Positions 10,724 through 64,000 of a DNA stretch of 64,000 nt are shown in pieces. The notes under the pieces are model-generated. The model saw only the letters and a list, made by a program, of their open reading frames with translations. It did no database searches and had not been told where the DNA came from. A program made the position numbers and the translations under genes. Positions within the stretch are counted from its first letter, which is position 1; every line of letters starts with the position of its first letter. Origin of the DNA: Macrostomum lignano (Eukaryota); contig NIVC01001223.1 of assembly GCA_002269645.1 (NCBI GenBank), positions 62,001 through 126,000 on the forward strand, given 5' to 3'.

Positions 10724-11236
10724 GTACAGCAAACTTTAAATGGAGGTTTCTACTGGCATTCTGTTTTTTAGGATAGCAATTGTTGGGTATCCTATGACAA
10801 TTAGAGCTTCAGCTACTATTAAGGGTCAAAATCCTTACTACTCAACGATGGGAACGCCAACCAATGTCACCCGCTCGTTTAATAACATTCAGAACTGTCG
10901 ACAGTCCTTAACCCGAAACTGCGTTTTTCGTTTGCCAAAAAACGTCAAGCACTTAATGGATTTTTCAATTTTTCATTCATAAGTCTTAAGGACCTTCTTT
11001 AGTAGAAGCCAGAGTAGTTAGCCACTCTTCAGGCGACAGTAAAGCCGCAACCAGCAGCGAGGAGACGAGCCGTTACGTCCATTTCGCTGAACCACACTCA
11101 CACCAGGATGTACAGCAGCCCTCACTTTCTCATATCAGGCAGGTACACAAAGTTGACTAACATCGAAACCCAAACTGATGTGACAGCGCACGGTATCAAA
11201 CTCACGGTAGTTTTGGCTCGAGAGACGGGCACGTAA

Positions 11237-22489: not shown

Positions 22490-24629
22490 ATTCGTTTGTT
22501 ACTTTGTCTTGTAATGAATGTACTTCGTATAATAGTACAAGGCTACCAAAGTTTGTTTAGTTTTGAGCCAATTTTACGCTGCGATTATGATCTTTAAAAT
22601 ACTTTGAAACGATGCACGATCTGCTTAGATACAAAAAAATATAATTAAATGCAAAAATATGTATAAAAAATTGTTTGATTCTTGTTTTTATTGACCATTT
22701 ATACTGAAGTAGAATTTATATTTATATACCTGTTATTTATTGTATGTTTTTTGTTAAACTCTTTCTAAACTATCTAAAGAATCCGTAAATTTAATATTTT
22801 CTGACAGTAAACTTCTACTATTTGAATCTAATAAATTCTCAGTTAGATGGCGAACATACATATTTTAAGAAATATGTCATGTATAACGTATAATAGTCTT
22901 TTGGTTTCAAACCATTTGGCTATGAAGTCTTCGATTTATGAAATTTCCGATTTCCAGAGAAAATATTTTGGAAGAGAGATGGGATTAGAGTTGCAATTTT
23001 GCAAAGCAATTTGTTTGATTGTTTGCCTCAGGAGTCCAAAAACTTAAACTTAACATTCTTCTAACTAACTCAAACTGAAAAAATTACACTACAAGTAGCA
23101 TTACATGTAGATAATTAATTTTTATAACAAATTCGAAATTCAAAAAAAAATAAGAATAAAAGAAATTTTTGGAAAAGCAGAAAATATCAGGTTTCATGCT
23201 TATGCTTTAAAAGCGAAGCCAGCAGTCTGACAAAATTGAGAGTTACGAGCACTTAAGACTTTCCAGAAAGTCTGCTTAGAGTCGGTATACATGTAAGGCA
23301 AATCATGGATTAGGACAGGCTTACAGGCGCCATCTTAGTGAAAATGGCGCCATCATAGCAATTAGTCTTTATTATATTTCAGTCTAAAAGCACTGCAATT
23401 GATTTAGTAAAACCCTTCAAAACCCCTTAGCCTTTTTCCTAACGGATGAGCAAAGTGCATTAATTTCGTATTATTGTAAAAAAGAAATTAGCGCCTCTCG
23501 AAAGATTCAACTTGGAAAAAGTAAAGTTTACATGAGCAGAGCAAGCGCGCACGATCTTTCGAGAAATTAAGATTATTACGAGCTATCCCGCCCAAGTGCG
23601 CCAAAATTCTGATCGATGACAGAACTTTCTAAACAATTGGACTACAACGCAACCAAAAAATAAAACGTAAATCCAACGCGTAACGCAATGTACGGACAAT
23701 CCACATGCGGCCTGCCTATGGTGCGGAGCTTGCGTCTGCAATCATATCATTACATACTCGTATCTATAGTCCTCGACGTCTGCGCGGTGCTTGTAGCGTT
23801 GGAGCCAGCAGGATGTCCCCGCAGAGTGCAGAGGCTTGGACAGTATAGACTCAGAGCAAGTGCATATTACATATATTACATATTACACTATTACATATAC
23901 TGTATAGAGCCCAAATCGATCGATACGATCATATCATGTCATCAAATACCTAGATCTGATCCTACATACGCTTTAGTAAAACTCATATTTTGAAACTGAG
24001 TTCAAAATGGCATCCTGGCTAGGTCCAAATTCAAAGTAAATACCGGAGATTCCCAGCTGGAATCTGTGGAAAAGTTCAAAATCAATTAAAAAAGCAACAT
24101 CTCTACCCCATCCTGTACACTGCTGAGCCTCTGACATACAGAAGTTGCAGAAGTCAGCAAGCTCCATGCTTATAAAATTCCAAAATTCCCAAATTAAAGT
24201 TGATCTGTTATCATGACGCACGCAATCACTCAAAAAAATGTAGGGTTTTAAAGCTATACAACTAAACCATAGAATTCCGAAATGTACTCGTATATCTCAG
24301 CCATGGGCAAGTTTCGATTTGGGAAGCATGCAATCACTGTAAGATGCAATGAAATCGTTTAATTCTTACAATTTAAAGCTTGTAAGAGAATCCAGTTGTA
24401 AAAATACTCGCTTATAATAGGCTACATGACCCCAAAAAGGGTTTGTACTAGCCTCAGACTATTACATAAAAACTGGCTTAATTAGTCAAGCTTTAGATGT
24501 ACATGTATGTCATTCAAAGAATTTAGAAAGTGCACAGTACAAATGAAAATGGAAGTTTTTGCTGTACTGCTCAGAAGCTGCACTAGATTAACAGAACCGG
24601 GTTAAATGCGGAACCAGTGTCAAATTGGT

Positions 24630-25030
24630 GAAAAAAACAACAATAGCAATAAAAATAACAGCAGCAGCAACAACAACAACAACAGTAAAAACAACAACAA
24701 CCACAACCACAACAACAACAACAACAAAAATAACAATAACAGCAACAATAACAGACACAGCCCAGCAAGGTCAAGCGGTCAGGGTGCATCAAATGTCGCA
24801 CCGCCGAGCGAGCCCGCGAACGAAGTCCACCCGGGCAGTGTCGGGCGCTAGTGTTCAGCAGGACGTCCTGCAGAAGCTGGGGGCAGCAGCTCTCGGCCCA
24901 CATCACGCGGACAGGCGTTGCACGGGCCCTCTGGTCACAGGGCCTCGGTCCCGACACTCTCGTCAGCTCGAAAGGCCTCGCGGAGCTGCCCCCGAATGCG
25001 CCGAGTCCAACTGTCGCTCCAGTTGATTCA
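24630..25030 (-). mobile_element. Second RTE-like LINE 3' fragment with a long (TTG/TGT)n tail
   Basis: Shares aaggtcaagcggtcagggtgcatca, cagcaggacgtcct and gccgagtcca blocks with 11237-11530; encodes LERQLDSAHSG...WAESCCPQLLQDVLL; (CAA)n tract at 24630-24755. Confidence 0.8.
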
Positions 25031-27003: not shown

Positions 27004-27410
27004 ATTGGAGGTGACTGCAGCTCTTAGGAGCGCCTATATTTGGTCTCTTGGTAGGCGCCCCCTGTCACTTGGTTGGCGCCACTGTCTCTTGGTTAGTGCC
27101 CCTGTCTCCTGGTGGGCGCTCCTGTCTCTTGTTTGGAGCCCCTGTCTCCTGGTTAGCGCACCACCCTTGTCTCTCGGTGGGCGCTCCTGTCTCTTGGTTG
27201 GCGCCCCTGTCTCTTGGTTGGCGCCCCTGTCTCTTGGTTGGCGCCCCTGTCTCTTGGTTGGCGCCCCTGTCTCTTGGTTGGCGCCCCTGTCTCTTGGTTG
27301 GCGCCCCTGTCTCTTGGTTGGCGCCCCTGTCTCTTGGTTGGCGCCCCTGTCTCTTGGTTGGCGCCCCTGTCTCTTGGTTGGCGCCCCTGTCTCTTGGTTG
27401 GCGCCCCTTA
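27004..27410. repeat. 20-bp minisatellite (GCGCCCCTGTCTCTTGGTTG), copy A of a family
   Basis: Period 20; shares a leader with the arrays at 31889 and 36903. Confidence 0.92.
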
Positions 27411-31888: not shown

Positions 31889-33005
31889 ATTGGAGGGGCC
31901 GCAACCCTAAGGGATGACAATATTAGGTGTCTTGGTAAGGCGCCCCTGTCCTAGTCGGCGGCCCCTGTCTCTTGGTGGGCACCCCTGTCTCTTGATAGAC
32001 GCCCCTGTCTCTTGGTGGGCGCCCCTGTCTCTTGATAGGCGCCCCCGTCTCTTGGTGGGCGCCCCTGTCTCTTGGTGGGCGCCCCTGTCTCTTGATAGAC
32101 GCCCCTGTCTCTTGGTGGGCGCCCCTGTCTCTTGATAGACGCCAATGTCTCTTGGTGGGCGCCCCTGTCTCTTGGTTAGCGCGACTGTCTCTTGGTTAGC
32201 GCGACTGTCTCTTGGTTAGCGCGACTGTCTCTTGGTTAGCGCGACTGTCTCTTGGTTAGCGCGACTGTCTCTTGGTTAGCGCCCCTGTCTCTTGGTGGGC
32301 ACCCCTGTCTCTTGATTAGCGCCCCTGTCTCTTGGTGGGCGCCCTGTCTCTTGATTAGCGCCCCTGTCTCTTGGTGGGCGCCCCTGTCTCTTGGTGGGCG
32401 CAACTGTCTCTTGGTTAGCGCCCCTGTCTCTTGGTGGGCGCCCTGTCTCTTGATTAGCGCCCCTGTCTCTTGGTGGGCGCCCCTGTCTCTTGGTGGGCGC
32501 CCCTGTCTCTTGGTTAGCGCCCCTGTCTCTTGGTTAGCGCCCCTGTCTCTTGGTTAGCGCCCCTGTCTCTTGGTGGGCGCCCCTGTCTCTTAGTGGGCGC
32601 AACTGTCTCTTGGTTAGCGCCCCTGTCTCTTGGTGGGCGCCCTGTCTCTTGATTAGCGCCCCTGTCTCTCTGTGGGCGCCCCTGTTTCTTGGTGGGCGCA
32701 ACTGTCTCTTGGTTAGCGCCCCTGTCTCTTGGTTAGCGCCCCTGTCTCTTGGTTAGCGCCCCTGTCTCTTGGTTAGCGCCCCTGTCTCTTGGTGGGCGCC
32801 CCTGTCTCTTGGTGGGCGCAACTGTCTCTTGGTTAGCGCCCCTGTCTCTTGGTTAGCGCCCCTGTCTCTTGGTTAGCGCCCCTGTCTCTTGATTAGCGCC
32901 CCTGTCTCTTGGTAGGCGCCCTGTCTCTTGGTTAGCGCCCCTGTCTCTTGATTAGCGCCCCTGTCTCTTGGTGGGCGCCCCTGTCTCTTAGTAGTCGTCC
33001 CTGTC
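31889..33005. repeat. 20-bp GCGCCCCTGTCTCTTGGT family array, copy B
   Basis: Same unit and leader as 27004 and 36903. Confidence 0.92.
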
Positions 33006-35254
33006 TGTAGGTGAATGGCTTCCGAGATTTTATACTTATAACTAATAGAATTTAGTTTCTTTAAACCCGACAATCAATTTCCCAAAATGGAATAAAAATT
33101 CTTAAAAATTTACGACCCCCCCCCGCCAAGACTGGCCTCACCCCACCCCCTAAAAGACTTTGAACTGATGGTTATCAGATATTTGGCAAAGTTGTCCTGC
33201 TATCTATGGCAAAAGCTCTGAGCTATACTGCTCCCAACCCCAACCAAGATGTGACCAGTTGATCTGTCAAGCTTGTAAATCACCAATCTAGAAAGCTCGT
33301 GAGCAAATCAATTGACCTGACAATGCCCCGAATCGAAGCTAAGGTCGATGACAGGCTTCATAGGATGACAGGGCAATGAATGGGTCCAGGATTCTTAGGG
33401 ATAGATAATATATATAATATTTTTTCTAAATCTTTTTCACAATGCAAGTTTAATAGTGTGTGTCTCGCAGATTTGAGAGAGACCAGCTCCCCCCATGAGG
33501 GCACTGTTGTTGAGCCCCGAGGCTATCAATCAGACCCCCCCCCTATTATATAGCTCTAAGGTATAAGGGTTGTGAGTTGGGATTTCGATTTGACAGCTTG
33601 TATAGAGAATTCACATACAGGACACCCCTCGATTCCCTCATATTTATATGCCTAGACAGGCTAAAACCACTAAGCAACTATATACGAACTAAGCTGTATT
33701 CATAATGTTAATTATTTCTCCATCAAAGATTGTTCAAGGCGTTCGGAACAAATAACTGAAACACAAAATCTCTATGCAAAGAATTTAAGCTTTGGTTTAC
33801 AGGTATTGATGGGGCATATTGTCATTTTGATGGAGAACAGGGGATGTTGGAGATGTAGGAGATGTATAGGATTCTTTGTTGCAAATGTACTCCAACAAAG
33901 AATTTCTATAATATGACGGCCCCTGTTGCTTGGGTAACCATGGACATCGAACTCCTAAATCCATATACTAATGGATTAGAAACCCATCTGACTTCTATTT
34001 CTGAAAATCTGTGTTACACTACCTTAAGAGCTTAGTGGAAATAAATATGATATATTCCATATGGGGACTTGTATTATGTCCCGTGTCAATCATAAAAAGC
34101 AATTGCCGCAGACCAGCAAGAATCGTCTCGAAGTCTGTCTTCCTTCTCAGCCGTCCCTTCAACAGTCTTCCCGTATTCGGGAGAACTTTTTTCTCCCACC
34201 ACCACTCTTGGCAGCAGATCCTCCGGCTTCTCACGCGCTGGAGCCGCCTGCAACTCTTGACTGAGCCCCCCCCCCCCTATACATACTATGCATATAGAGC
34301 TGCATGTAGAGTTCATCTTTCTTTTTTCTCTGCGCGGAATCCCCCCCCCCCCCCTGCTAGGCTATGAGCCCCGCCCCGGTGTCATGGAACCCATGCGGAA
34401 GGGGTGCCCGATAGTAGCTTCATCAGGAGCCAGCCTCCCGCAGCGGGTCTCATTAGCGGCTCTGTGAGTTCCCTGCGCAGCAAGTGTTCAACTGTGAAAC
34501 AGAGACTGCAGGGAAGGAACCGAGGAAGCTGGCAGTCGATAACAATTTCAGTCCCCGCGCTTCCTTGAGTTGCCTTTTTCTTCTGGTCTGAGGAACTTGA
34601 GTAAGGAAGCAGCGTGATGGCCGAGTCTATAAAAAAACCACTCGCATGACTTGGGGGTTGCTAATTAAGTTCTGCAGGTTAGGAGCTGGGAGTTGGAGGG
34701 GCAAGTCAGGTTTTTTTATTGTTCGATACCTGCTTGAGGCCTAATTAAATGAAGATTTCTTGCCGTTGCGGCGGAGCAGGGGAAAAACTGATTTCTGCAG
34801 AGAATTCAAGTTGGGGAGAAGTTGCGGTCCGATGGGCTTGCGAGTCGACTTCCCCGAGGAGTCAGTTTTTTCAAATTTAACGGAATTTCTCAGAATTGGA
34901 ATTACGCCCCCCTTCATGAACAAAAACTTGAATGTTGCGAGTGAGTCCTGAAACACCATAGAAAATAGATGCGAAATGAAAAACAAAACTGTTTAAATTT
35001 TTGTTGTGTCAGCCGGATTCTGGTTTTAATCCTGCAGTGTATCCGGTCCCGGGAGCTTTGGATTTACATTTTTGATGCGAATTAAAAATCTAGCTTAGCC
35101 ATTCTTTTATTTAATTAGACTCTAAATTTAGATCTGCCGTAGATCTACTATAGATACGAGTTAGATCTTACTTAAACTTGATTTGAATTTGTTCAAATAG
35201 CTAGACCCGGTTTATTTAGAGGCAAAGGGTTGCTGTGTGAAATTACTAATAATA

Positions 35255-36902: not shown

Positions 36903-37745
36903 ATTGGAGGGGCCGCAACCCGAAAGGCACCAATATTCGGTCTCTTGGTAGGCGCTCCCGTCTCTTGGTTGGCGCCCCTGTCTCTTGGTTGGCGCCCCTG
37001 TCTCTTGTTTGGCGCCCCTGTCTCTTACTTGCCGCCCCTGTCTCTTGTTTGGAGCCCCTGTCTCTTGTTTAGCGCTCCTGTCGCTTGTTTGGCGCCCCTG
37101 TCTCTTATTTGGCGCCCCTGTCTTTTGTTTGGCGCCCCTGTCTCTTATTTGGCGCCCCTGTCTCTTGTTTGGCGCCCCTGTCTCTTGTTTAGCGCTCCTG
37201 TCGCTTGTTTGGCGCCCCTGTCTCTTATTTGGCGCCCCTGTCTTTTGTTTGGCGCCCCTGTCTCTTATTTGGCGCCCCTGTCTCTTGTTTGGAGCCCCTG
37301 TCTCTTGTTTAGCGCTCCTGTCGCTTGTTTGGCGCCCCTGTTTCTTATTTGGCGCCCCTGTCTTTTGTTTGGCGCCCCTGTCTCTTATTTGGCGCCCCTG
37401 TCTCTTGTTTGGCGCCCCTGTCTCTTGTTTGGCGCCCCTGTCTCTTACTTGGCGCCCCTGTCTCTTGTTTGGAGCCCCTGTCTCTTGTTTAGCGCTCCTG
37501 TCGCTTGTTTGGCGCCCCTGTTTCTTATTTGGCGCCCCTGTCTTTTGTTTGGCGCCCCTGTCTCTTGTTTGGTGCCCCTGCCGCTTATTTGGCGCCCCTG
37601 TCTCTTGTTTAGCGCCCCTGTCTCTTATTTGGCGCCCCTGTTTCTTATTTGGCGCCCCTGTCTCTTGTTTGGCGACCCTATCTTTTGGTAAGCGCCCCTT
37701 TCACTCGGTAGGCGCCCCTGTCTCTTTATAGACACCCCTGTCTCT
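36903..37745. repeat. 20-bp family array, copy C (GCGCCCCTGTCTCTTGTTTG variant)
   Basis: Period 20; shared leader. Confidence 0.92.
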
Positions 37746-38178
37746 TGGTAGACGCCTCAGTCACTTGGTAGACGCCTCAGTCACTTGGTAGACGCCTCAG
37801 TCACTTGGTAGACGCCTCAGTCACTTGGTAGACGCCTCAGTCACTTGGTAGACGCCTCAGTCACTTGGTAGACGCCTCAGTCACTTGGTAGACGCCTCAG
37901 TCACTTGGTAGACGCCTCAGTCACTTGGTAGACGCCTCAGTCACTTGGTAGACGCCTCAGTCACTTGGTAGACGCCTCAGTCACTTGGTAGACGCCTCAG
38001 TCACTTGGTAGACGCCTCAGTCACTTGGTAGACGCCTCAGTCACTTGGTAGACGCCTCAGTCACTTGGTAGACGCCTCAGTCACTTGGTAGACGCCTCAG
38101 TCACTTGGTAGACGCCTCAGTCACTTGGTAGACGCCTCAGTCACTTGGTAGACGCCTCAGTCACTTGGTAGACGTCCC
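37746..38178. repeat. Perfect 20-bp array (ACGCCTCAGTCACTTGGTAG), about 21 copies, derived from the adjacent array
   Basis: 15/20 identity to the neighbouring family unit and contiguous with it. Confidence 0.95.
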
Positions 38179-38366
38179 TGTCAGCAAGGCCGGCGAATTC
38201 GACGTCCATCAGAAGCGGCAAAAGTTGAGCTCCTGTCCCCTCTTGGACCCCTCTGTCCTCTCCCGCCCTTCCCTGGTGCCAATATTTGATATAAAATCTG
38301 AGCCACTGGTTTTATTTCCTAAGAAGTCAACAACTTACACTGTCTCAACCCCCTTTCCGCTACCAG

Positions 38367-42028: not shown

Positions 42029-45000
42029 GATCTGGGATCTGGGATCTGGATCTGGGATCTGGATCTGGGATCTGGATCTGGGATCTGGATCTGGGATCTG
42101 GATCTGGGATCTGGATCTGGGATCTGGATCTGGGATCTGGATCTGGGATCTGGATCTGGGATCTGGATCTGGGATCTGGATCTGGGATCTGGATCTGGGA
42201 TCTGGATCTGGGATCTGGATCTGGGATCTGGATCTGGGATCTGGATCTGGGATCTGGATCTGGGATCTGGATCTGGGATCTGGATCTGGGATCTGGATCT
42301 GGGATCTGGATCTGGGATCTGGATCTGGGATCTGGATCTGGGATCTGGATCTGGGATCTGGATCTGGGATCTGGATCTGGGATCTGGATCTGGGATCTGG
42401 ATCTGGGATCTGGATCTGGGATCTGGATCTGGGATCTGGATCTGGGATCTGGATCTGGGATCTGGATCTGGGATCTGGATCTGGGATCTGGATCTGGGAT
42501 CTGGATCTGGGATCTGGATCTGGGATCTGGATCTGGGATCTGGATCTGGGATCTGGATCTGGGATCTGGATCTGGGATCTGGATCTGGGATCTGGATCTG
42601 GGATCTGGATCTGGGATCTGGATCTGGGATCTGGATCTGGGATCTGGATCTGGGATCTGGATCTGGGATCTGGATCTGGGATCTGGATCTGGGATCTGGA
42701 TCTGGGATCTGGATCTGGGATCTGGATCTGGGATCTGGATCTGGGATCTGGATCTGGGATCTGGATCTGGGATCTGGATCTGGGATCTGGATCTGGGATC
42801 TGGATCTGGGATCTGGATCTGGGATCTGGATCTGGGATCTGGATCTGGGATCTGGATCTGGGATCTGGATCTGGGATCTGGATCTGGGATCTGGATCTGG
42901 GATCTGGATCTGGGATCTGGATCTGGGATCTGGATCTGGGATCTGGATCTGGGATCTGGATCTGGGATCTGGATCTGGGATCTGGATCTGGGATCTGGAT
43001 CTGGGATCTGGATCTGGGATCTGGATCTGGGATCTGGATCTGGGATCTGGATCTGGGATCTGGATCTGGGATCTGGATCTGGGATCTGGATCTGGGATCT
43101 GGATCTGGGATCTGGATCTGGGATCTGGATCTGGGATCTGGATCTGGGATCTGGATCTGGGATCTGGATCTGGGATCTGGATCTGGGATCTGGATCTGGG
43201 ATCTGGATCTGGGATCTGGATCTGGGATCTGGATCTGGGATCTGGATCTGGGATCTGGATCTGGGATCTGGATCTGGGATCTGGATCTGGGATCTGGATC
43301 TGGGATCTGGATCTGGGATCTGGATCTGGGATCTGGATCTGGGATCTGGATCTGGGATCTGGATCTGGGATCTGGATCTGGGATCTGGATCTGGGATCTG
43401 GATCTGGGATCTGGATCTGGGATCTGGATCTGGGATCTGGATCTGGGATCTGGATCTGGGATCTGGATCTGGGATCTGGATCTGGGATCTGGATCTGGGA
43501 TCTGGATCTGGGATCTGGATCTGGGATCTGGATCTGGGATCTGGATCTGGGATCTGGATCTGGGATCTGGATCTGGGATCTGGATCTGGGATCTGGATCT
43601 GGGATCTGGATCTGGGATCTGGATCTGGGATCTGGATCTGGGATCTGGATCTGGGATCTGGATCTGGGATCTGGATCTGGGATCTGGATCTGGGATCTGG
43701 ATCTGGGATCTGGATCTGGGATCTGGATCTGGGATCTGGATCTGGGATCTGGATCTGGGATCTGGATCTGGGATCTGGATCTGGGATCTGGATCTGGGAT
43801 CTGGATCTGGGATCTGGATCTGGGATCTGGATCTGGGATCTGGATCTGGGATCTGGATCTGGGATCTGGATCTGGGATCTGGATCTGGGATCTGGATCTG
43901 GGATCTGGATCTGGGATCTGGATCTGGGATCTGGATCTGGGATCTGGATCTGGGATCTGGATCTGGGATCTGGATCTGGGATCTGGATCTGGGATCTGGA
44001 TCTGGGATCTGGATCTGGGATCTGGATCTGGGATCTGGATCTGGGATCTGGATCTGGGATCTGGATCTGGGATCTGGATCTGGGATCTGGATCTGGGATC
44101 TGGATCTGGGATCTGGATCTGGGATCTGGATCTGGGATCTGGATCTGGGATCTGGATCTGGGATCTGGATCTGGGATCTGGATCTGGGATCTGGATCTGG
44201 GATCTGGATCTGGGATCTGGATCTGGGATCTGGATCTGGGATCTGGATCTGGGATCTGGATCTGGGATCTGGATCTGGGATCTGGATCTGGGATCTGGAT
44301 CTGGGATCTGGATCTGGGATCTGGATCTGGGATCTGGATCTGGGATCTGGATCTGGGATCTGGATCTGGGATCTGGATCTGGGATCTGGATCTGGGATCT
44401 GGATCTGGGATCTGGATCTGGGATCTGGATCTGGGATCTGGATCTGGGATCTGGATCTGGGATCTGGATCTGGGATCTGGATCTGGGATCTGGATCTGGG
44501 ATCTGGATCTGGGATCTGGATCTGGGATCTGGATCTGGGATCTGGATCTGGGATCTGGATCTGGGATCTGGATCTGGGATCTGGATCTGGGATCTGGATC
44601 TGGGATCTGGATCTGGGATCTGGATCTGGGATCTGGATCTGGGATCTGGATCTGGGATCTGGATCTGGGATCTGGATCTGGGATCTGGATCTGGGATCTG
44701 GATCTGGGATCTGGATCTGGGATCTGGATCTGGGATCTGGATCTGGGATCTGGATCTGGGATCTGGATCTGGGATCTGGATCTGGGATCTGGATCTGGGA
44801 TCTGGATCTGGGATCTGGATCTGGGATCTGGATCTGGGATCTGGATCTGGGATCTGGATCTGGGATCTGGATCTGGGATCTGGATCTGGGATCTGGATCT
44901 GGGATCTGGATCTGGGATCTGGATCTGGGATCTGGATCTGGGATCTGGATCTGGGATCTGGATCTGGGATCTGGATCTGGGATCTGGATCTGGGATCTGG

Positions 45001-45129
45001 ATCTGGGATCTGGATCTGGGATCTGGATCTGGGATCTGGATCTGGGATCTGGATCTGGGATCTGGATCTGGGATCTGGATCTGGGATCTGGATCTGGGAT
45101 CTGGATCTGGGATCTGGATCTGGGATCTG
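42029..45129. repeat. 13-bp satellite (CTGGGATCTGGAT), about 238 apparently identical copies
   Basis: Direct inspection. Confidence 0.98.
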
Positions 45130-45639: not shown

Positions 45640-46025
<386 letters not shown>

Positions 46026-46065
46026 GCCAGCCAATCCCCGCCTCCCTCTTTGCCAGCAGAAAACG

Positions 46066-46323
46066 ATGGCATTCATTCTTAGCCGCCGCCACCTGTTCCT
46101 GACTGTCATCGCCCTGGGCTGCATTCTCGCGGCCGCCGGAGATGCCGCCGGCGCCGCGGCCAGCTCGACGAGTGGCTGCACCCGGGAGGTCGGCGCAACC
46201 GCCGAGTGTCGCAGCCACGCCGACTGCTGCGAGCCGAACCTCTGTCTGAAGAAGCGGGGCAACACGGTCGGATACTGCTGCTGCACCTGGCCCTCCTACG
46301 GCAGCGAGGCTGATGGCAAATAA
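46066..46323 (+). CDS. Putative secreted cysteine-rich (ICK/knottin-like) peptide precursor, 85 aa
   Basis: Strong start context (acgATGG), marked GC3 codon bias, hydrophobic signal peptide, C-x9-C-x5-CC-x4-C-x10-CCC pattern, terminal GK*. Confidence 0.75.
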   Translation: MAFILSRRHLFLTVIALGCILAAAGDAAGAAASSTSGCTREVGATAECRSHADCCEPNLCLKKRGNTVGYCCCTWPSYGSEADGK

Positions 46324-46984
46324 TGAGCCGATGCGGCCCCGGCAACATTGAGACAAAAACACTCGAAAAACAACGTTGGAAAATACTGGCCCCGAAACTC
46401 CCCACCCCCAGTCCTTACTGGCTCCGTGAACTGAGCACGAATTTTGATTGCTGCTTTTAGTATAGCTGCTTTGCTTGTCCAATTTATAAAAATCTTTAAT
46501 GGGAACACAAAAGTACATGCGATATTTTTTTAAATCTGACTGAATTGATGTTCTGCGCAGTGTGTGAATATTCTCTGTCATGAATTCATGTGAACTTTTG
46601 TCACTGAGCGCGCGCTAATGTACTTCTGGTTGTGAATGCTGCCCGTGTGAAATTTCTTGTGAATCGAGGTGACTATTTAGCTAATGTAATACTCTGAACC
46701 AATTTAAATATAAATTTTAACGGCAAAACATGTTCAAAGGCAAAGTGCGCTATCATTTTACAACAGTTTTTTACTCACAGCAGACTACTCACAGCCGGCT
46801 GAAAAAGTAACGTTAGCAAGACCGGAGAATGGGTGCATGAGCACTTACATGTATAAGTGCATAACCACATCTACATGTATCTAGGATTCAATATATTTAT
46901 TTATCTGCATGGATAAGTGCGTAATATACTTCCTCACTGTGAAGATCACATGGTCAGGCCATGGACACACGTACTATAAGCCTT

Positions 46985-49220: not shown

Positions 49221-49744
49221 GTGGGGAGTGTAAAATTGGGTCTCGGACTATTTGGTTTGAAAAAATTAAATATTGTGAACATTCATAAAAATCATAGTGT
49301 TTTTTGTTATTAAAAAAATTGCACAGAGCTCTCTGTGCAGATTAAAAGTTGATTTAAAAACAAAAAGAATCAAGAATGTCGTAAGTACAGCTGCATTAGT
49401 TAGTTGGTTTAAAAGAGAATGTACTCGTCTACGCATAGAATAAGATTTTATATTTGCACGCAAATATCACAATTATTTAAGATTAAATTTCATCAAGTGT
49501 CTAGAACAGCGACCGTGGACTCAGCAAAGCACTTCTGTAGGATCTGAGACTGCGAGGGGCAGACATTAGCAGTGCTGCTAGACGATGTAGCTCGCTGATG
49601 TAGTTGGACTTGTGACTGAGCCTGCAATTGCACAGATTATGCAGTATTGTATCCCCAGATCTGCAGTGCATGTCTAACCATCTGTCTAGACAAGCAACTA
49701 GGCCCGTGTTTTCCCTTCCATGTCTGAAGAAAATTGAATAGCAA

Positions 49745-51272
49745 GGTCAAAATTCCTGATCCCAATCTGAGATCCCAGATTCCCGATCCCAATCTGAGAT
49801 CCCACATTCCTGATCCCAATCTGGAATCCCACATTCCTGATCCCAATCTGAAATCCCACATTCCTGATCCCAATCTGAAATCCCACATTCCTGATCCCAA
49901 TCTGAAATCCCACATACCTGATCCCAATTTTAAATCCCACATACCTGATCCCAATTTTAAATCCCATATTCCTGATCCTAATCTGAAATCCCACATTGAT
50001 CCCAATCTGAGATCCCAGATTCCCGATCCCAATCTGGAATCCCGGATTCCTGATCCCAATCTGCAATCCCAGATTCCTGATTCCAATCTGAGATTCCAGA
50101 TTCCTGATCCCAATTTTAAATCCCAGATTCCTGATCCAAATATGAAATCCCACATTCCTGATCCCAATCTGAAATCCCACATTCCTGATCCCAATCTGAA
50201 ATCCCACATTCCTGATCCCAATTTTAAATCCCAGATTCCTGATCCTCATCTGCAATCCCACATTCCTGATCCCAATCTGAGATCCCACATTCCTGATCCC
50301 AATCTGAAATCCCACATACCTGATCCCAATTTTAAATCCCATATTCCTGATCCTAATCTGAAATCCCACATTGATCCCAATCTGAGATCCCAGATTCCCG
50401 ATTCCAATCTGGAATCCCGGATTCCTGATCCCAATCTGCAATCCCAGATTCCTGATTCCAATCTGAGATCCCAGATTCCTGATCCCAATTTTAAATCCCA
50501 GATTCCTGATCCCAATCTGAAATCCCATATTCCTGATCCAAATATGAAATCCCAGATTCCTGATCCCAATCTGAAAACCCAGATTCCTGATCCTTATCTG
50601 CAATCCCAAATTCCTGATCCCAATTTGAAATCTCACATTTCTGATCCCAATCTGAGATCCCAGATTCCTGATCCTAATCTGAGATCCCGGATTCCTAATC
50701 CCAATCTGAGATCCCAGATTCCTGATCCCAATTTGAAATCCCACATTTCTGATCCCAATCTGAAATCCCAGATTTCTGATCTTAATCTGAGATCCCGGAT
50801 TCCTGATCCTAATCTGAGATCCCAGATTCCTGATCCCAATTTGAAATCCCACATTCCCGATCCCAATCTGAGATCCCGGATTCCTGATCCCAATCTGAAA
50901 TCCAGGATTCCTGATCCTAATCTGTAATCCCAGATTCCTAATCCCAATCTGAAATCCCAGATTCCCGATCCCAATTTTAAATTTCATATTTCTGATCCCA
51001 ATCTGAGATCCCAGTTTCCTGATCCTCATCTGCAATCCCACATTCCTGATCCCAATCTGAGATCCCACATACCTGATCCCAATTTGAAATCCCACATTTC
51101 TGATCCCAATCTGAGATCCCAGATTTCTGATCCCAATCCATAATCCAGGATTCCTGATCCTCATCTGCAATCCCAGATTCCTGATCCCAATCTGAAGTCC
51201 CACAGTCCTGATCCCAATCTGAGATCCCACGTTCGTGATCCCAATCTGAGATCCCAGATTCCTGATCCCAAT
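49745..51272. repeat. 27-bp diverged minisatellite (TTCCTGATCCCAATCTGAAATCCCACA-like)
   Basis: Period 27; source of the SQIPDPNLR pseudo-ORFs. Confidence 0.95.
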
Positions 51273-51284
51273 TTGTGTGCTCAC

Positions 51285-51744
51285 TCCTGCCGCCATAGCC
51301 CGAAGGCTTCCGATTCCTGTTGGCCGACAGCGAAGAAGCCGAAGAAGAGACCGTCGCCATTGCCAAGTCGTCGTTTCCGCCGCCGCGACCGACGCCGCCG
51401 ATGCCGTTAACTCTGCCGCCGTCGCTGCCCGAGACGAACTGCACCGGCGGCAGTCCGACTGGCGACGGATAACGCGTCTGCTGGTTGTGAAGGCTGCTGG
51501 GCTGTTGCTGCTGCTGCTGTTGTTGCTGGGAGACGGGCCGCTGCGGCTGCGACTGCCGCCGGGGATTCTCCGTCCGAAGCGGCGGCGGCGGTGGGCGCCA
51601 TTCGGGATCGAGCTCTGAGTCGAATTTTGCTAAGGACGGGGCCGTCGGTCCGAATAAAATGTAGCAGAAATTTGCGCAGCCGCCGCCGTGGTCGAACGGG
51701 TTGATCAGATCCGGGTTGCGCTTTGTGTTGTACAGGTCCTTGAT
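51285..51744 (-). CDS. ZDHHC14: ZDHHC9/14/18-type palmitoyltransferase coding exon 5 (IKDLYNTKRNPDLINPFDHGGGCANFCYILFGP + low-complexity tail); the terminal exon is not resolved
   Basis: accaccag acceptor continues TNED|IK; probable A|gtgagc donor at 51285. Confidence 0.85.
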
Positions 51745-51789
51745 CTGGTGGTTAGGGAGAGGGTTGATGAGAAGTAGCACTAGTGTTGG

Positions 51790-53151: not shown

Positions 53152-53204
53152 CTTGACGTGGGTTTTATTATCGATTTATAGATTTTGTCAGATTGTGGCT
53201 GATT

Positions 53205-56200
53205 TTGAGCCCGATTAGCCAACCAATATTGACAGTTTTTGAGCCCGATTAGCTAACCAATATTGACAGTTTTTGAGCATAATTAGCCAACCAATATTGA
53301 CAGTTTTTGAGCCTAATTAGCCAACCAATATTGGCAGTTTTTGAGCCCGATTAGCCAACCAATATTGACAGTTTTTGAGCCCGATTAGCTAACCAATATT
53401 GACAGTTTTTGAGCCTAATTAGCTAACCAATATTGACAGTTTTTGAGCCCGATTAGCCAACCAATATTGACAGTTTTTGAGCCTAATTAGCCAACCAATA
53501 TTGACAGTTTTTGAGCCTAATTAGCTAACCAATATTGGCAGTTTTTGAGCCCGATTAGCCAACCAATATTGACAGTTTTTGAGCCTAATTAGCCAACCAA
53601 TATTGACAGTTTTTGAGCCCGATTAGCCAACCAATATTGGCAGTTTTTGAGCCTAATTAGCCAACCAATATTGGCAGTTTTTGAGCCCGATTAGCCAACC
53701 AATATTGACAGTTTTTGAGCCCGATTAGCCAACCAATATTGACAGTTTTTGAGCCTAATTAGCCAACCAATATTGGCAGTTTTTGAGCCCGATTAGCCAA
53801 CCAATATTGACAGTTTTTGAGCCCGATTAGCCAACCAATATTGGCAGTTTTTGAGCCCGATTAGCCAACCAATATTGACAGTTTTTGAGCCCGATTAGCC
53901 AACCAATATTGGCAGTTTTTGAGCCTAATTAGCTAACCAATATTGACAGTTTTTGAGCCCGATTAGCCAACCAATATTGACAGTTTTTGAGCCTAATTAG
54001 CCAACCAATATTGGCAGTTTTTGAGCCCGATTAGCCAACCAATATTGGCAGTTTTTGAGCCCGATTAGCCAACCAATATTGGCAGTTTTTGAGCCCGATT
54101 AGCCAACCAATATTGACAGTTTTTGAGCCCGATTAGCCAACCAATATTGGCAGTTTTTGAGCCTAATTAGCTAACCAATATTGACAGTTTTTGAGCCTAA
54201 TTAGCTAACCAATATTGACAGTTTTTGAGCCTAATTAGCTAACCAATATTGACAGTTTTTGAGCCCGATTAGCCAACCAATATTGACAGTTTTTGAGCCT
54301 AATTAGCCAACCAATATTGGCAGTTTTTGAGCCCGATTAGCCAACCAATATTGACAGTTTTTGAGCCCGATTAGCCAACCAATATTGACAGTTTTTGAGC
54401 CCGATTAGCCAACCAATATTGGCAGTTTTTGAGCCTAATTAGCTAACCAATATTGACAGTTTTTGAGCCTAATTAGCTAACCAATATTGACAGTTTTTGA
54501 GCCTAATTAGCTAACCAATATTGACAGTTTTTGAGCCTAATTAGCCAACCAATATTGACAGTTTTTGAGCCTAATTAGCCAACCAATATTGACAGTTTTT
54601 GAGCCTAATTAGCCAACCAATATTGGCAGTTTTTGAGCCCGATTAGCCAACCAATATTGACAGTTTTTGAGCCCGATTAGCCAACCAATATTGACAGTTT
54701 TTGAGCCCGATTAGCCAACCAATATTGGCAGTTTTTGAGCCTAATTAGCTAACCAATATTGACAGTTTTTGAGCCTAATTAGCTAACCAATATTGACAGT
54801 TTTTGAGCCTAATTAGCTAACCAATATTGACAGTTTTTGAGCCCGATTAGCCAACCAATATTGACAGTTTTTGAGCCTAATTAGCCAACCAATATTGGCA
54901 GTTTTTGAGCCCGATTAGCCAACCAATATTGACAGTTTTTGAGCCCGATTAGCCAACCAATATTGACAGTTTTTGAGCCCGATTAGCCAACCAATATTGA
55001 CAGTTTTTGAGCCTAATTAGCTAACCAATATTGGCAGTTTTTGAGCCCGATTAGCCAACCAATATTGGCAGTTTTTGAGCCTAATTAGCTAACCAATATT
55101 GACAGTTTTTGAGCCTAATTAGCTAACCAATATTGACAGTTTTTGAGCCTAATTAGCTAACCAATATTGACAGTTTTTGAGCCTAATTAGCCAACCAATA
55201 TTGACAGTTTTTGAGCCTAATTAGCCAACCAATATTGGCAGTTTTTGAGCCCGATTAGCCAACCAATATTGACAGTTTTTGAGCCCGATTAGCCAACCAA
55301 TATTGACAGTTTTTGAGCCCGATTAGCCAACCAATATTGGCAGTTTTTGAGCCTAATTAGCTAACCAATATTGACAGTTTTTGAGCCTAATTAGCTAACC
55401 AATATTGACAGTTTTTGAGCCTAATTAGCTAACCAATATTGACAGTTTTTGAGCCTAATTAGCTAACCAATATTGACAGTTTTTGAGCCTAATTAGCTAA
55501 CCAATATTGACAGTTTTTGAGCCTAATTAGCTAACCAATATTGACAGTTTTTGAGCCTAATTAGCTAACCAATATTGACAGTTTTTGAGCCTAATTAGCT
55601 AACCAATATTGACAGTTTTTGAGCCCGATTAGCTAACCAATATTGACAGTTTTTGAGCCTAATTAGCTAACCAATATTGACAGTTTTTGAGCCTAATTAG
55701 CTAACCAATATTGACAGTTTTTGAGCCTAATTAGCTAACCAATATTGACAGTTTTTGAGCCTAATTAGCTAACCAATATTGACAGTTTTTGAGCCTAATT
55801 AGCTAACCAATATTGACAGTTTTTGAGCCCGATTAGCTAACCAATATTGACAGTTTTTGAGCCTAATTAGCTAACCAATATTGACAGTTTTTGAGCCTAA
55901 TTAGCTAACCAATATTGACAGTTTTTGAGCCCGATTAGCCAACCAATATTGACAGTTTTTGAGCCTAATTAGCTAACCAATATTGACAGTTTTTGAGCCT
56001 AATTAGCTAACCAATATTGACAGTTTTTGAGCCTAATTAGCTAACCAATATTGACAGTTTTTGAGCCTAATTAGCTAACCAATATTGACAGTTTTTGAGC
56101 CTAATTAGCTAACCAATATTGACAGTTTTTGAGCCTAATTAGCTAACCAATATTGACAGTTTTTGAGCCCGATTAGCTAACCAATATTGACAGTTTTTGA

Positions 56201-56355
56201 GCCTAATTAGCTAACCAATATTGACAGTTTTTGAGCCCGATTAGCTAACCAATATTGACAGTTTTTGAGCCTAATTAGCTAACCAATATTGACAGTTTTT
56301 GAGCCCGATTAGCCAACCAATATTGGCAGTTTTTGAGCCCGATTAGCTAACCAAT
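53205..56355. repeat. 34-bp minisatellite (GAGCC[CG/TA]ATTAGC[C/T]AACCAATATTG[A/G]CAGTTTTT), about 92 copies, in the first coding intron of ZDHHC
   Basis: Period 34. Confidence 0.98.
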
Positions 56356-61374: not shown

Positions 61375-64000
61375 TTAACCTTTCGGCTGACGTTTGTATA
61401 TAACTAGTCGAGCATCTGACGAAATATTTTTCAGCAAAGACGTAGAAGTGCTTAGCTCTGTGGTCATTAGATCGTCCAGCAAGTAGCATATGTCACCTTT
61501 TGATGGAAATACATAAGCGACGTAATGACCTTCGTCGACTCGTTCTCCCAGGTGCACAATCACACTTTAGAGGCAATAGCGCTGATTGTTATAGTCAATT
61601 TCTGGCGTTAAATCGAAGCCCACTCGGTTCTTGACAATAGTTGCCTGGCTTCTCAAGAGCCTGTTCACGACGAAGCACAGGAGAGGTGGCGCATTTTGAG
61701 GAGTTCTGCTATGAACGCAGCTACTTGTCTGACAGGCTGTGCATGTGATGTCATCAGACTCGTCCGGTCGTAGTGCCGCATTCACAAGCTGAATCAGCTG
61801 CTGTCCTTCAACTGGTTGAACCACCACGAATGTTTCATGCAAACTTTCAGTAGTCGCGGCATTATTGCACCGGAGACATAGGGTGGACCCGCCGAGCTAA
61901 AATAATAAAGCCAAACAGCTGAGACGGAATTGAAAACATCGATTTAAAGTGCCTGTACTCTCTTACTGCCATCTATGCTGTACGTGTCCGATCCTGGATT
62001 CATATTTGTTTACATGTATTTGCCTCTTTTTACTACATTAGTTCCCTATGATATTGTCGTTTCAAATGGTTTCCGTTCAAAAAGTAAAGCAAGTTTCTGT
62101 ACTCGTAAGTGCTTTTTGAAATTTAGAAACGAGAAGTATTACCTGAATTCTAAACTGGCGACGAATAGTCTGCAGCTTTTGAGAAATGAGCACGAAAAAT
62201 TCAAAGCAGTCGTTATATTCGTTGGTATTTATTTGACCAGCCGTACAGCATTCTTCCAATGCAGTGTTGTACAAATATTCGCTGAATCCAGATCTGCTCG
62301 AAATGTTGGCCAAGAGTCGTATAAGAAAGGACGAATTCACGGCTGTTTCAGAAAAATTTCTCCCTGACAATGCCGCACCAACTGCGTGAAGACTGGCGTT
62401 GAACCAACAGAGTTTTCCATTACGATTGGGTAGGCCGAATGGACGATAGCCTGATGTCGATAGCGCCGAAGCTTCGACAGTAACAAAACTGGCGACATGA
62501 TCAGAACAATCAACAAAAGCATGAGCGGCTGGCTCGTTTATCACTGTTGGCAGTGGCGGATCTAGGATTTTATTTAAGGTGGGCGGTCCAAGTTTGTGGC
62601 GCAACATGAGTATGAGGGGCGCCAATTTTTAAGCTAGGGGCGCAAAAAATGCGTGTAGGGGGCGAAAAATCAAGTTTAAAGGGCACAAACTTAGGTTTTT
62701 TGGGGGGGGGGCAATATGTTTCATCCAGCTGTTTCGGGGGGGGGGGGGGCGCTCCCCCCCCCCCCCCCCCCCTAAATCCGCCCCTGACTGTTGGTATTCG
62801 TGGAAACTCACCATTGCTACGGTTAGCAGACTCACAAGTTATAGATTCATGTGCACGTTCATGACGCCAAAGCTTATTTTGTTCGATGCGTTCCTCTCGA
62901 GAAAATCCTTTGCGTCGACGTCCCTTATTCGATCGAGAAGCTTTTAAGATTTTGCCGATTCCTACAGGCTTCTCGGCAACTCGGGGCAATCCAATTTTTC
63001 GTCTAACCGCTGCGATATGCGAACACGATTGAGCAGAGACACAAGAACACGAAGCAACGCCGTTGCTAAATGTCACAACATTATTTCGTCCGGCAACGTT
63101 AGTCACTATGAAGTTACCAAGAGTAGGGTTGAATGAAACTTTATGTTGCTCACTAAGCAAGCTGATCCGTGTCGACTGTTCGTTGTCGTCTAGATCGACA
63201 TTAACTCGCACAGATTTGTGGCTAGATTCTCCAACGGGCTGGTGAACAGGAGTACCAGTAGCATCATTGGACAATGAAGGCCCCGTGCCACCTGACTCAT
63301 TGCTGTTGCTATCATAGAAACTCATGTTGGGACGTATGACAGTCACTTTAATCGCACCAATTTCTCGAATTTCTCGAGTCGCTGAAGTCTGAGAGTGCCG
63401 GCGTTGAATGTTCGCAGCTATTTGTTCTAACGACAACGATGGAGAGAGTGTTACAGTTTCGGGCGACTGTTGTAGATGTTGGAACTCCGGCTTTAGTGTA
63501 GTTTCCTTGGCCACACAAACCACGAAGAATTTCGTTCCTGTAGTATCGAGAAGTTTGGTAAAGTCCGACAATGCAGTCATCGATCGTTGCATCCTTGAAG
63601 TTAAGCACACGCTTGAGCATTGCGTTTATTGATTCTGATTGGTTCTGAGTTACACCGGTAACTGGGCAGTAGTGCGATTGTAGAATCCACTTTGCAAAAA
63701 ATTTAGGGATTAATGGGTGAATTTGATTGTCAAAATAAGCGGCAAAACTTGGATTCCAGTTTTTTTTGCAGCTTGCATACTGGGCATTGTACTGCTCGAT
63801 GCTGTCTGTTTCTAGCAGGGAGAGTAGATCTGCTGAAATCATGTCTTCATCAGCCGATGTTCCACCGTTCTTGCGAATCCAGAACCGGACGTCCCGCTTC
63901 AGATGGTTCCAGCATCCCAAAAATCGGATATTGGGGAAGACAGAAGCCATCGAATTTCTCAGCCCAATTTCTCCATCCATAACGCATGCCACATTAGTAG
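61375..64000 (-). pseudogene. Decayed Mutator-like (MULE) transposase - SWIM finger - USP/C19-like peptidase gene; its 5' part lies beyond the window
   Basis: MULE motifs (VMDGEIGLRNSMASVFPNIRFLGCWNH; TQNQSESIN), SWIM CSC-x5-CSH, USP Cys box (GLPNRNGKLCWFNASL) and His box (IVHLGERVDEGHYVAYV..YLLDD); one frameshift (near 63497), one MITE insertion, one in-frame stop (61567-61569) and a GT-AG intron at 61897-62142. Confidence 0.85.
62551..62786. mobile_element. 236-bp hAT-type MITE inserted in the MULE ORF
   Basis: TIRs CAGTGGCGGATCTAGG / CCTAAATCCGCCCCTG; 8-bp TSD ACTGTTGG at 62543-62550 and 62787-62794. Confidence 0.93.

What the first reader, a model, noticed from the sequence alone, without database searches (positions are those of the whole stretch)
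46066..46323. Orphan secreted knottin-like (toxin or neuropeptide-like) precursor with 8 Cys and a possible amidation signal
Seen: a GC3-biased 85-aa ORF in AT-rich and repeat DNA, with a signal-peptide-like N-terminus (LFLTVIALGCILAAAG), a short Ala/Ser spacer, C38-x9-C48-x5-C54C55-x4-C60-x10-C71C72C73, an internal KKR and a terminal GK* followed by a second stop. Established: the C-C-CC-C-C order with CxxxxDCC is the inhibitor cystine knot framework of conotoxins and spider toxins, and Gly-Lys ends are substrates for carboxypeptidase/PAM amidation. The terminal CCC is atypical. Inference: a possibly undescribed lineage-specific defence, predation, reproductive-gland or signalling peptide.
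Basis: partly seen in the sequence, partly recalled or inferred. Interest (0 to 1): 0.75.

Follow-up and report, generated by a model that had tools for sequence, protein, structure and literature searches.

The report
Flatworm secreted knottin-like peptide gene
This is a real, small, flatworm-specific gene (Macrostomum lignano) for a secreted 8-cysteine mini-protein that most likely folds like spider and cone-snail "knottin" peptides; it has one sister gene, no known relatives elsewhere, and no known function.

Summary
The ORF is exactly as described: 46066-46323 (+), 85 aa, signal-like N-terminus, C38-x9-C48-x5-CC-x4-C60-x10-CCC, KKR, GK, two stops. The window is Macrostomum lignano contig NIVC01001223.1. 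The ORF is an annotated single-exon gene in an annotation built only from RNA-seq transcripts. It occurs in three near-identical homeologous copies, each between a C2H2 zinc-finger gene and a DHHC gene. An exhaustive search of 1.84 billion protein representatives found one true relative, the M. lignano paralogue Mlig007253 (105 aa). It has the same 8-Cys framework, the same MxxI(L/V)SRR start and unrelated UTRs. No Pfam family matches, and no other organism has a detectable relative. AlphaFold models of both paralogues (pLDDT 65 and 73) show the Cys V-VI beta-hairpin. Their best PDB matches are mostly knottins (robustoxin, PcTx1, Hc3a, EETI-II), but none is significant. The Gly-Lys amidation signal is not conserved (the paralogue ends GEK), and KKR lies inside the predicted hairpin, so the neuropeptide-processing reading is weak. 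Verdict: a genuine, lineage-restricted, secreted knottin-like peptide family. Fold is probable; disulfide pairing, tissue and function are untested. Modest interest.

The parts
46066..46323 (+). Complete single-exon CDS of the 85-aa precursor (stop TAA 46321-46323; a second stop TGA follows at 46324-46326)
   Evidence: sequence and translation; annotated gene model of exactly this range on three contigs of GCA_002269645.1; GC3 0.81
46066..46140 (+). Predicted signal peptide, residues 1-25: n-region with R7 R8, h-region L10-L21, c-region AAAG, likely cleavage G25|D26
   Evidence: hydropathy maximum 2.94 over V14-A22; -3/-1 rule. Heuristic only, SignalP was not available. The MxxI(L/V)SRR start and a hydrophobic core are conserved in the paralogue.
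46141..46320 (+). Predicted mature peptide D26-K85 (60 aa, about 6.1 kDa, pI about 5.6); no basic propeptide cleavage site before the first Cys
46177..46284 (+). Cys-rich core C38-C73: C-x9-C-x5-CC-x4-C-x10-CCC. Invariant between paralogues: 8 Cys, R49, H51, D53, P57, N58, K63, R64, G65, G69; P76 lies just after the core.
   Evidence: framework and paralogue alignment; AF2 hairpin N58-L61 / G69-C73; knottin-dominated structural neighbours, none significant
46249..46257 (+). K62-K63-R64, a basic patch in the Cys V-Cys VI loop (MKR in the paralogue). It aligns with the KRR of the PcTx1/Hc1b hairpin. Unlikely to be a convertase site.
   Evidence: alignments to pi-hexatoxin-Hc1b and PcTx1; position relative to the predicted strands
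46315..46320 (+). C-terminal Gly84-Lys85, a formally possible amidation signal that is not conserved in the paralogue (GEK)
46036..46059 (+). Strong 3' splice-acceptor-like site (ccccgcctccctctttgccAGcAG), 7-10 nt upstream of the ATG. Candidate cis- or SL-trans-splice acceptor. Exon start to ATG = 9 or 6 nt, in frame with the AUG that ends the M. lignano spliced leader.
   Evidence: 14/16 pyrimidines; such sites occur about once per 2.3 kb of strand; SL sequence ends ...TTGCATG, PMC5173321; 39% of transcripts are trans-spliced. Use of the site is inferred, not shown.
45665..45983 (.). (TATC)n microsatellite immediately upstream (context, not part of the gene). It leaves only about 80 bp of unique DNA before the ATG. 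Its length differs among the homeologous copies: 71, 55 and 29 units.

Best explanation
A genuine, transcribed, lineage-restricted gene of the flatworm Macrostomum lignano. It is one of a two-gene family, and each gene is present in three homeologous copies of this neopolyploid. It encodes an 85-aa precursor. Inferred steps: the N-terminal 25 residues direct it into the ER and are removed; the ~60-residue product folds into a compact four-disulfide mini-protein of the inhibitor-cystine-knot (knottin) type. The likely knot is C38-C55, C48-C60 and C54-C71, with the fourth bond made inside or with the C-terminal CCC triplet. The peptide is then secreted and acts outside the cell as a stable ligand. 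It most plausibly binds a channel or receptor through the conserved H-x-D-CC...K-R-G surface around the Cys V-VI hairpin. Shown: the gene, its copies, its paralogue, the conserved framework, the coding signature. Inferred: secretion, the knottin fold, the pairing. Conjecture: target and biological role (exocrine defence or prey capture, reproduction, or endogenous signalling).
For: Gene reality. The identical 85-aa model is annotated on three contigs, each flanked by a C2H2-ZnF gene and a convergent DHHC gene. That annotation derives solely from RNA-seq transcript assemblies, with non-coding and repeat-overlapping transcripts removed (PMC5730564). GC3 is 0.81 against flank GC of 0.42-0.45. A strong splice acceptor lies 7-10 nt before the ATG. 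An in-frame stop lies upstream and a double stop downstream. Family. Exhaustive phmmer over 1.84e9 representatives finds the M. lignano paralogue at E = 1.4e-6 with 52% identity over 33 aa. All 8 Cys plus R49, H51, D53, P57, N58, K63, R64, G65, G69 and P76 are invariant, and the N-terminus is shared. Constraint. Among homeologues of both genes, the CDSs carry 4 synonymous and 2 non-synonymous changes; both non-synonymous changes are in the signal/pro region, none is in the Cys domain, and there are no indels. Fold. AF2 models of both paralogues give core pLDDT 73-82 and the same hairpin. Foldseek top hit for both is robustoxin, rmsd 1.3-1.4 A over 26 columns. About 11/17 and 20/26 of the listed hits are knottins. 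The only PDB sequence hit is an ICK domain of pi-hexatoxin-Hc1b. hhalign to PcTx1 gives probability 75% over 17 columns.
Against: No sequence or structure match to any knottin is statistically significant: PDB phmmer/hmmsearch E = 0.27-0.87, Foldseek E >= 0.95, no Pfam hit. AF2 confidence is only moderate with a two-sequence alignment, and AF2 may simply reproduce the fold it associates with this Cys spacing. Loop 1 (9 or 12 residues) is long for a classical ICK. The CDS-versus-flank substitution contrast among homeologues is weak (p = 0.07 and 0.27). An apparently strong value (p = 2e-6) proved not robust. dN/dS between the paralogues is 0.75-1, which fits fast loop evolution or weak constraint. 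The signal peptide was judged by heuristics only. No tissue, protein-level or functional data were found.
Confidence: 0.7

Rival explanations
1. It is a neuropeptide or peptide-hormone precursor. The precursor is cut at the dibasic KKR and C-terminally amidated via Gly-Lys in the regulated secretory pathway of neurons or endocrine cells.
For: The window gene ends ...D-G-K-stop, and Gly followed by a terminal basic residue is a classical carboxypeptidase/PAM substrate (established knowledge). A K-K-R triplet is present. Signal-peptide anatomy is present. Some endogenous hormones are cystine-rich.
Against: The paralogue ends ...P-G-E-K, so no Gly precedes the basic residue and the amidation signal is not a family feature. 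KKR/MKR lies in the loop of the predicted Cys V-VI hairpin inside the disulfide core, where the same basic motif is a structural and functional loop in PcTx1/Hc1b. Cleavage there would give a two-chain product rather than release a peptide. There are no repeated peptide copies, no flanking dibasic sites and no match to any neuropeptide family in Pfam.
Confidence: 0.1
2. It is an antimicrobial or host-defence peptide (defensin-like or knottin-type AMP) secreted into mucus.
For: It is a small, secreted, Cys-stabilised peptide that is lineage-restricted and evolves fast in its loops. The paralogue's mature part is basic, pI about 8.9. A few defensins appear at the bottom of the Foldseek lists.
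Against: The window gene's mature peptide is slightly acidic (pI about 5.6; 6 K+R versus 7 D+E), which is unusual for membrane-active AMPs. Structural neighbours are overwhelmingly channel- or receptor-binding knottins rather than defensins. There is no amphipathic cationic surface evident from the sequence.
Confidence: 0.1
3. It is not a functional protein-coding gene. It would be a chance ORF in a GC-rich island, a decaying pseudogene, or an exon or UTR piece of a larger transcript wrongly called as a gene.
For: The ORF is very short. A longer ORF exists on the opposite strand. Homeologue comparisons have little power (p = 0.07 and 0.27). The dN/dS between paralogues is near 1 outside the core. 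Only ~80 bp of unique DNA precede the ATG, so no obvious promoter is present. An older UniRef model fuses the paralogue to a 275-aa upstream stretch.
Against: The paralogue has unrelated UTRs yet keeps the reading frame, all 8 Cys, 10 further residues and the N-terminal motif, with length differences only in whole codons. GC3 is 0.81 and 0.95 in this frame. The antisense ORF is broken in the paralogue. All six gene copies are intact, with non-synonymous changes only in the signal/pro region. The upstream in-frame stop and the Met-plus-signal-peptide start argue against an internal exon. The 380-aa model lacks a Met and has a low-complexity extension, so it is an artefact.
Confidence: 0.08

Closest known systems
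Spider ICK toxins of the PcTx1 / pi-hexatoxin (Hi1a, Hc1b/Hc3a) group, which are ASIC1a modulators
   Same: Framework C-C-CC-C-C with loop 2 = 5-6, loop 4 = 4 and loop 5 = 9-10. Shared local motif H-x-D-C-C-E-x-x-x-C-x-K-(K/R)-R(-G-N) spanning Cys III-V and the basic hairpin. These toxins recur among the structural neighbours of both models.
   Different: Similarity is confined to 14-22 residues and is not significant at database level (E = 0.27-0.87). Here there are two extra Cys (CCC at the Cys VI position), a longer loop 1 (9 or 12 versus 6), a 12-residue acidic C-terminal tail, and no basic propeptide in the window gene. The source is a flatworm, not an arachnid, so convergence on a common scaffold is more likely than shared ancestry.
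delta-Hexatoxins (robustoxin / delta-atracotoxin; Pfam PF05353)
   Same: 8-Cys, four-disulfide knottins containing a run of three consecutive Cys (sequence verified). Best Foldseek match for both paralogue models: TM about 0.5, rmsd 1.3-1.4 A over 26 columns.
   Different: The CCC triplet sits at the Cys III/IV site in delta-hexatoxins and at the Cys VI site here. The Pfam Atracotoxin match is only E = 2.3, far below its cut-off. Foldseek E-values are 0.95 and 1.9.
kappa-Hexatoxin-Hv1c (Janus-faced atracotoxin), an ICK with an extra vicinal disulfide
   Same: Six knot cysteines plus two additional adjacent cysteines that bond to each other (PMC4029134). This is the simplest way for the present peptide to satisfy 8 Cys if C38-C55, C48-C60 and C54-C71 form the knot, leaving C72-C73.
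   Different: In kappa-HXTX the vicinal pair lies in a loop, not at the C-terminal end of the last strand. No sequence similarity was detected. The pairing here is wholly untested.
alpha-Nemertides, ICK neurotoxins in the epidermal mucus of ribbon worms
   Same: Precedent for knottin peptides made by a soft-bodied, non-arthropod, non-molluscan spiralian worm and secreted in epidermal mucus, where they act on prey or predator sodium channels (PMC6410017). This is the most plausible ecological analogue.
   Different: alpha-Nemertides are about 31 residues with 6 Cys and hydroxyprolines. No sequence relationship was detected in the exhaustive search. The localisation and activity of the Macrostomum peptide are unknown.

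Membership tests
Inhibitor cystine knot (knottin) fold class | Six cysteines in the order C-C-CC-C-C with short loops | tested here: met
   C38-x9-C48-x5-C54C55-x4-C60-x10-C71, and the same in the paralogue with loop 1 = 12. Loop 1 is longer than in most knottins (my own knowledge of typical ranges).
Inhibitor cystine knot (knottin) fold class | Disulfide connectivity I-IV, II-V, III-VI, with the third bond threading the ring formed by the other two | not testable with these tools
   Model coordinates were not exposed. This needs MS/NMR mapping of the folded peptide.
Inhibitor cystine knot (knottin) fold class | Beta-hairpin carrying Cys V and Cys VI, as part of a small antiparallel sheet | tested here: met
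   AF2 strands at N58-L61 / G69-C73 in the window peptide and at the equivalent residues 30-34 / 41-45 in the paralogue. Core pLDDT is 73-82, moderate confidence.
Inhibitor cystine knot (knottin) fold class | Significant structural similarity to solved knottins | tested here: inconclusive
   Foldseek versus PDB: the hit lists are dominated by knottins, but the best E-values are 0.95 and 1.9 and TM is 0.3-0.6 over 20-30 columns.
Curated ICK toxin sequence families (Pfam spider, cone-snail and plant knottin families, including Atracotoxin PF05353) | Profile match above the family's gathering score | tested here: not met
   No Pfam family reaches threshold for either paralogue or for the mature domains. 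The best toxin hit is Atracotoxin at E = 2.3, 8.8 bits versus a cut-off of 25.
PcTx1 / pi-hexatoxin ASIC-toxin family | Database-significant sequence similarity over the whole knot | tested here: not met
   PDB phmmer E = 0.87 and profile E = 0.27, over residues 51-72 only. The pairwise hhalign probability of 75% over 17 columns is not corrected for database size.
Amidated neuropeptide / prohormone | C-terminal Gly followed by basic residue(s), conserved in the family | tested here: not met
   Present in the window gene (DGK-stop) but absent in the paralogue (GEK-stop).
Amidated neuropeptide / prohormone | Dibasic convertase sites that flank and release the bioactive peptide | tested here: not met
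   The only basic cluster (KKR / MKR) lies inside the disulfide core in the predicted Cys V-VI hairpin loop.
Classical secretory protein | Cleavable N-terminal signal peptide | tested here: inconclusive
   n/h/c anatomy and -3/-1 sites are present in both paralogues by a hydropathy heuristic. No trained predictor such as SignalP was available.
Taxonomically restricted (orphan) gene | No detectable homologue outside the lineage | tested here: met
   The 5.8e9-protein word search returned self only. Exhaustive phmmer of 1.84e9 representatives returned self plus the M. lignano paralogue; the four other hits are repeat-protein artefacts. The JGI metagenome scan gave one spurious bacterial hit. Limit: the query was a single 53-aa sequence, and other Macrostomum transcriptomes may not be in these collections.

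The most novel reading that the evidence does not exclude
This would be the first inhibitor-cystine-knot peptide family described from a free-living flatworm (Macrostomorpha). It would carry a non-canonical fourth disulfide formed within a C-terminal Cys-Cys-Cys triplet (a vicinal C72-C73 bond or a C-terminal staple). It would be used as an exocrine toxin or defence peptide that gates or blocks an ion channel through a PcTx1-like basic hairpin, an independent invention of the spider and cone-snail solution in Platyhelminthes.
Probability: 0.12. Interest if true: 0.65.

Novelty: new member of a known kind. Interest (0 to 1): 0.35.

Why it matters
If the fold and secretion are confirmed, Platyhelminthes would join the animal lineages that evolved or retained knottin-type secreted peptides, here with an uncatalogued C-C-CC-C-CCC framework. 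M. lignano has transgenesis (PMC5730564), and by my own knowledge RNAi by soaking and a transparent body, so the in vivo role of such a peptide could be tested directly. That is hard in spiders or cone snails. The practical value is modest: one more stable disulfide scaffold with a possibly channel-directed loop. As it stands, the gene is an uncharacterised 'hypothetical protein' with a plausible fold assignment, not a surprise for specialists.

Tried and rejected
(1) The word-indexed search of 5.8e9 proteins returned self only. Three later attempts with the paralogue or profiles timed out. The last allowed search found no candidates.

(2) Four of the five non-self hits of the exhaustive search (P0002, P0004-P0006) are repeat proteins whose scores are summed over 4-7 repeats and which lack the framework. 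I rejected them.

(3) The metagenome scan gave one hit, L006. It is an 8-residue match in a non-coding frame of a GC-rich bacterial contig, so I rejected it.

(4) The CDS-versus-flank substitution test for the paralogue first gave p = 2e-6. On redoing it with three copies and without a divergent or repetitive stretch, it fell to p = 0.27. I withdrew the strong value.

(5) Expression look-ups failed. The paralogue ID Mlig007253 is absent from full text and from the supplements of PMC5730564, PMC7336406 and PMC12896417. The family's peptide motifs are absent from the supplements of the seminal-fluid screen PMC5977470. The window gene's own ID is hidden by the tools.

(6) The planarian toxin preprint (10.1101/2025.01.09.632098) mentions neither Macrostomum nor knottins. 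The 'Macrostomum + knot' hits are root-knot nematodes.

(7) Rfam found nothing in the window. The bacterial promoter/terminator scan was not enriched and is irrelevant here.

(8) I considered insulin-like, hevein-like, granulin, WAP, EGF and hepcidin frameworks by Cys spacing (from my own knowledge) and rejected them. Spacing or Cys number does not fit, and Pfam gives no hit.

(9) I looked for the disulfide pairing in the AF2 model, but coordinates are not exposed.

Full report
**Observation.** The ORF is present exactly as reported. ATG is at 46066, and TAA at 46321-46323 is followed directly by TGA. The 85-aa product is MAFILSRRHLFLTVIALGCILAAAGDAAGAAASSTSGCTREVGATAECRSHADCCEPNLCLKKRGNTVGYCCCTWPSYGSEADGK. 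Its cysteines are at 38, 48, 54, 55, 60, 71, 72 and 73, plus Cys19 in the hydrophobic N-terminus. KKR is at 62-64 and GK at 84-85. GC3 is 0.81, against 0.42-0.45 GC in the flanks. Neighbouring bona fide exons in the window have GC3 of 0.56-0.82, so this is the coding signature of the genome rather than an oddity. The gene lies on a ~1-kb unique island in a landscape that is about 31% tandem arrays.

**Source and gene status.** The identical protein is an annotated gene model on three contigs of assembly GCA_002269645.1. The literature identifies this assembly as Macrostomum lignano Mlig_3_7. The window corresponds to NIVC01001223.1, roughly 62001-126000. In each copy the gene lies downstream of a C2H2 zinc-finger gene on the same strand and 3-4 kb from a convergent DHHC palmitoyltransferase gene. 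The three copies fit the known redundancy of this neopolyploid assembly. The GenBank annotation was produced only from genome-guided RNA-seq transcript assemblies, after removing non-coding and repeat-overlapping transcripts (PMC5730564). An annotated model therefore implies an assembled transcript.

**Gene boundaries.** An in-frame stop lies 23 codons upstream. A strong acceptor-like site (14/16 pyrimidines plus AG) lies 7-10 nt before the ATG, and such sites occur only about once per 2.3 kb of strand in the non-repeat part of the window. The M. lignano spliced leader ends in ATG (PMC5173321). Splicing at 46057 or 46060 would put that AUG in frame with the ORF. This is a noteworthy inference, but I could not test it.

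**Relatives.** A word-indexed search of 5.8e9 proteins found only the query. An exhaustive phmmer of the mature part against 1.84e9 cluster representatives found one true relative, P0003, at E = 1.4e-6. Four other hits are repeat proteins with inflated summed scores and no shared framework. P0003 is M. lignano BOX15_Mlig007253 (g1-g3), a 'hypothetical protein' of 105 aa, again a single-exon CDS in three copies.
- The two genes share the start MxxI(L/V)SRR, a hydrophobic core and the framework C-x9/12-C-x5-CC-x4-C-x10-CCC.
- Residues R49, H51, D53, P57, N58, K63, R64, G65, G69 and P76 are invariant.
- Their UTRs are unrelated, so the duplication is old.
- dN/dS is about 0.75 in the core and about 1 elsewhere. 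A fixed framework with fast loops is typical of secreted disulfide-rich peptides.
- Nothing was found in JGI metagenomes apart from a spurious bacterial match, and no Pfam family matches.

**Constraint among recent copies.** The window gene's CDS has 1 synonymous substitution in 258 bp, against 13/694 in the flanks (p = 0.07), and 0 versus 66 indel columns. For the paralogue, a first two-copy test looked very strong. It was inflated by a divergent or repetitive flank, and the three-copy redo gives 5/318 versus 37/1590 (p = 0.27). Taking both genes together, 4 of the 6 CDS changes are synonymous. The two non-synonymous ones (A21T, A40V) lie in the signal/pro region, and the Cys domain has none. 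This is consistent with purifying selection but has little power.

**Product.** Heuristic analysis shows n-, h- and c-regions, with a likely cleavage at G25|D26 in the window gene and G34|Q35 in the paralogue. The mature window peptide would be 60 aa with pI about 5.6, and the paralogue's would be basic. AlphaFold2 models built on the two-sequence alignment have moderate confidence: mean pLDDT 65 and 73, core blocks 73-82. Both place a beta-hairpin exactly between Cys V and the CCC.

**Fold comparison.** Foldseek against the PDB gives no significant hit. Both lists are nevertheless led by robustoxin (rmsd 1.3-1.4 A over 26 columns) and dominated by knottins: PcTx1, Hc3a, Hi1a, Pmu1a, Hm1a, jingzhaotoxins, Magi4, xibalbin, Evasin-3 and EETI-II. 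By sequence, the only PDB match is an ICK domain of pi-hexatoxin-Hc1b, at E = 0.87 and 0.27 with the profile. PcTx1, verified against 1lmm, aligns over H-x-DCCE...C-x-K-(K/R)-R at hhalign probability 75%. Robustoxin, verified, shows that an 8-Cys knottin can carry a CCC triplet. The kappa-hexatoxins show that two extra adjacent Cys can form a vicinal disulfide (PMC4029134). The knottin assignment is therefore the best-supported fold class. It is not proven, and membership of any named toxin family is not met.

**The processing signals.** The Gly-Lys end is not conserved, since the paralogue ends GEK. KKR/MKR sits in the hairpin loop within the disulfide core.

**Function.** I found no expression-site or functional information. 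By analogy with mucus knottins of ribbon worms (PMC6410017), the peptide could be an exocrine defence or prey-capture product. Alternatively, by analogy with the many unannotated secreted prostate transcripts of M. lignano (PMC5977470), it could be a reproductive secretion. Choosing between these needs in situ or single-cell data.

**Verdict.** This is a real, lineage-restricted, two-gene family of secreted knottin-like peptides with an unusual C-terminal Cys triplet. It is a new member of a known kind, of modest interest until its tissue, disulfide pairing and activity are known.

Noticed in passing
window 42029-45129; 53203-56355; 16412-18583; 27043-27408, 31930-33006 and 36940-38182: About 31% of the window is tandem arrays. 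They include a 13-bp unit x238 at 99% identity, a 34-bp unit x93 in the DHHC gene region, and the same 20-bp unit (GTCTCTTGGTTGGCGCCCCT) forming three separate arrays within 11 kb.
   Followed up: partly
window 45665-45983 (and L002, L003 at about 9600-9910): The (TATC)n microsatellite just upstream of the peptide gene has 71, 55 and 29 perfect units in the three homeologous copies, while the adjacent 390 bp including the CDS are almost identical.
   Followed up: partly
window 46003-46581 (-): A 192-aa ATG-ORF lies antisense to the peptide gene and is longer than the gene itself. The equivalent frames are interrupted in the paralogue, so it is a by-product of the GC-rich coding sequence.
   Followed up: yes
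window 11122-11337 (-) and 24583-24903 (-): Two spurious Cys-rich ORFs, one with 31 Cys in 106 aa, share a ~65-bp dispersed segment that abuts a (TGT)n-type microsatellite. This is a short interspersed repeat, not a peptide family.
   Followed up: partly
window 63348-63992 (-): Weak similarity to a Mutator-family transposase (Pfam PF00872, E = 8e-4, below the gathering score). Probably a decayed DNA-transposon remnant at the window edge.
   Followed up: no
paralogue copy g3 (L007 6001-6318); UniRef A0A1I8IXX4: An older 380-aa 'Secreted protein' model is the 105-aa paralogue with a Met-less, low-complexity 275-aa upstream extension. It looks like an annotation artefact from an earlier assembly.
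   Followed up: partly
window 46162-46320 (mature peptide) and the paralogue: Both sequence (Pfam TGase_elicitor, E = 0.25-0.5) and structure (Foldseek rank 2 for both models, 3tw5_A) weakly point to a Cys-rich piece of the Phytophthora GP42 transglutaminase. This is not significant and remains unexplained.
   Followed up: no
window 49578-51780 (-): The called range of the neighbouring DHHC gene begins at about 49578, so it includes the 27-bp minisatellite (49752-51272). An adjoining ORF (50977-51780) has a poly-Gln run, so part of that gene's 3' end may be repeat-derived.
   Followed up: no
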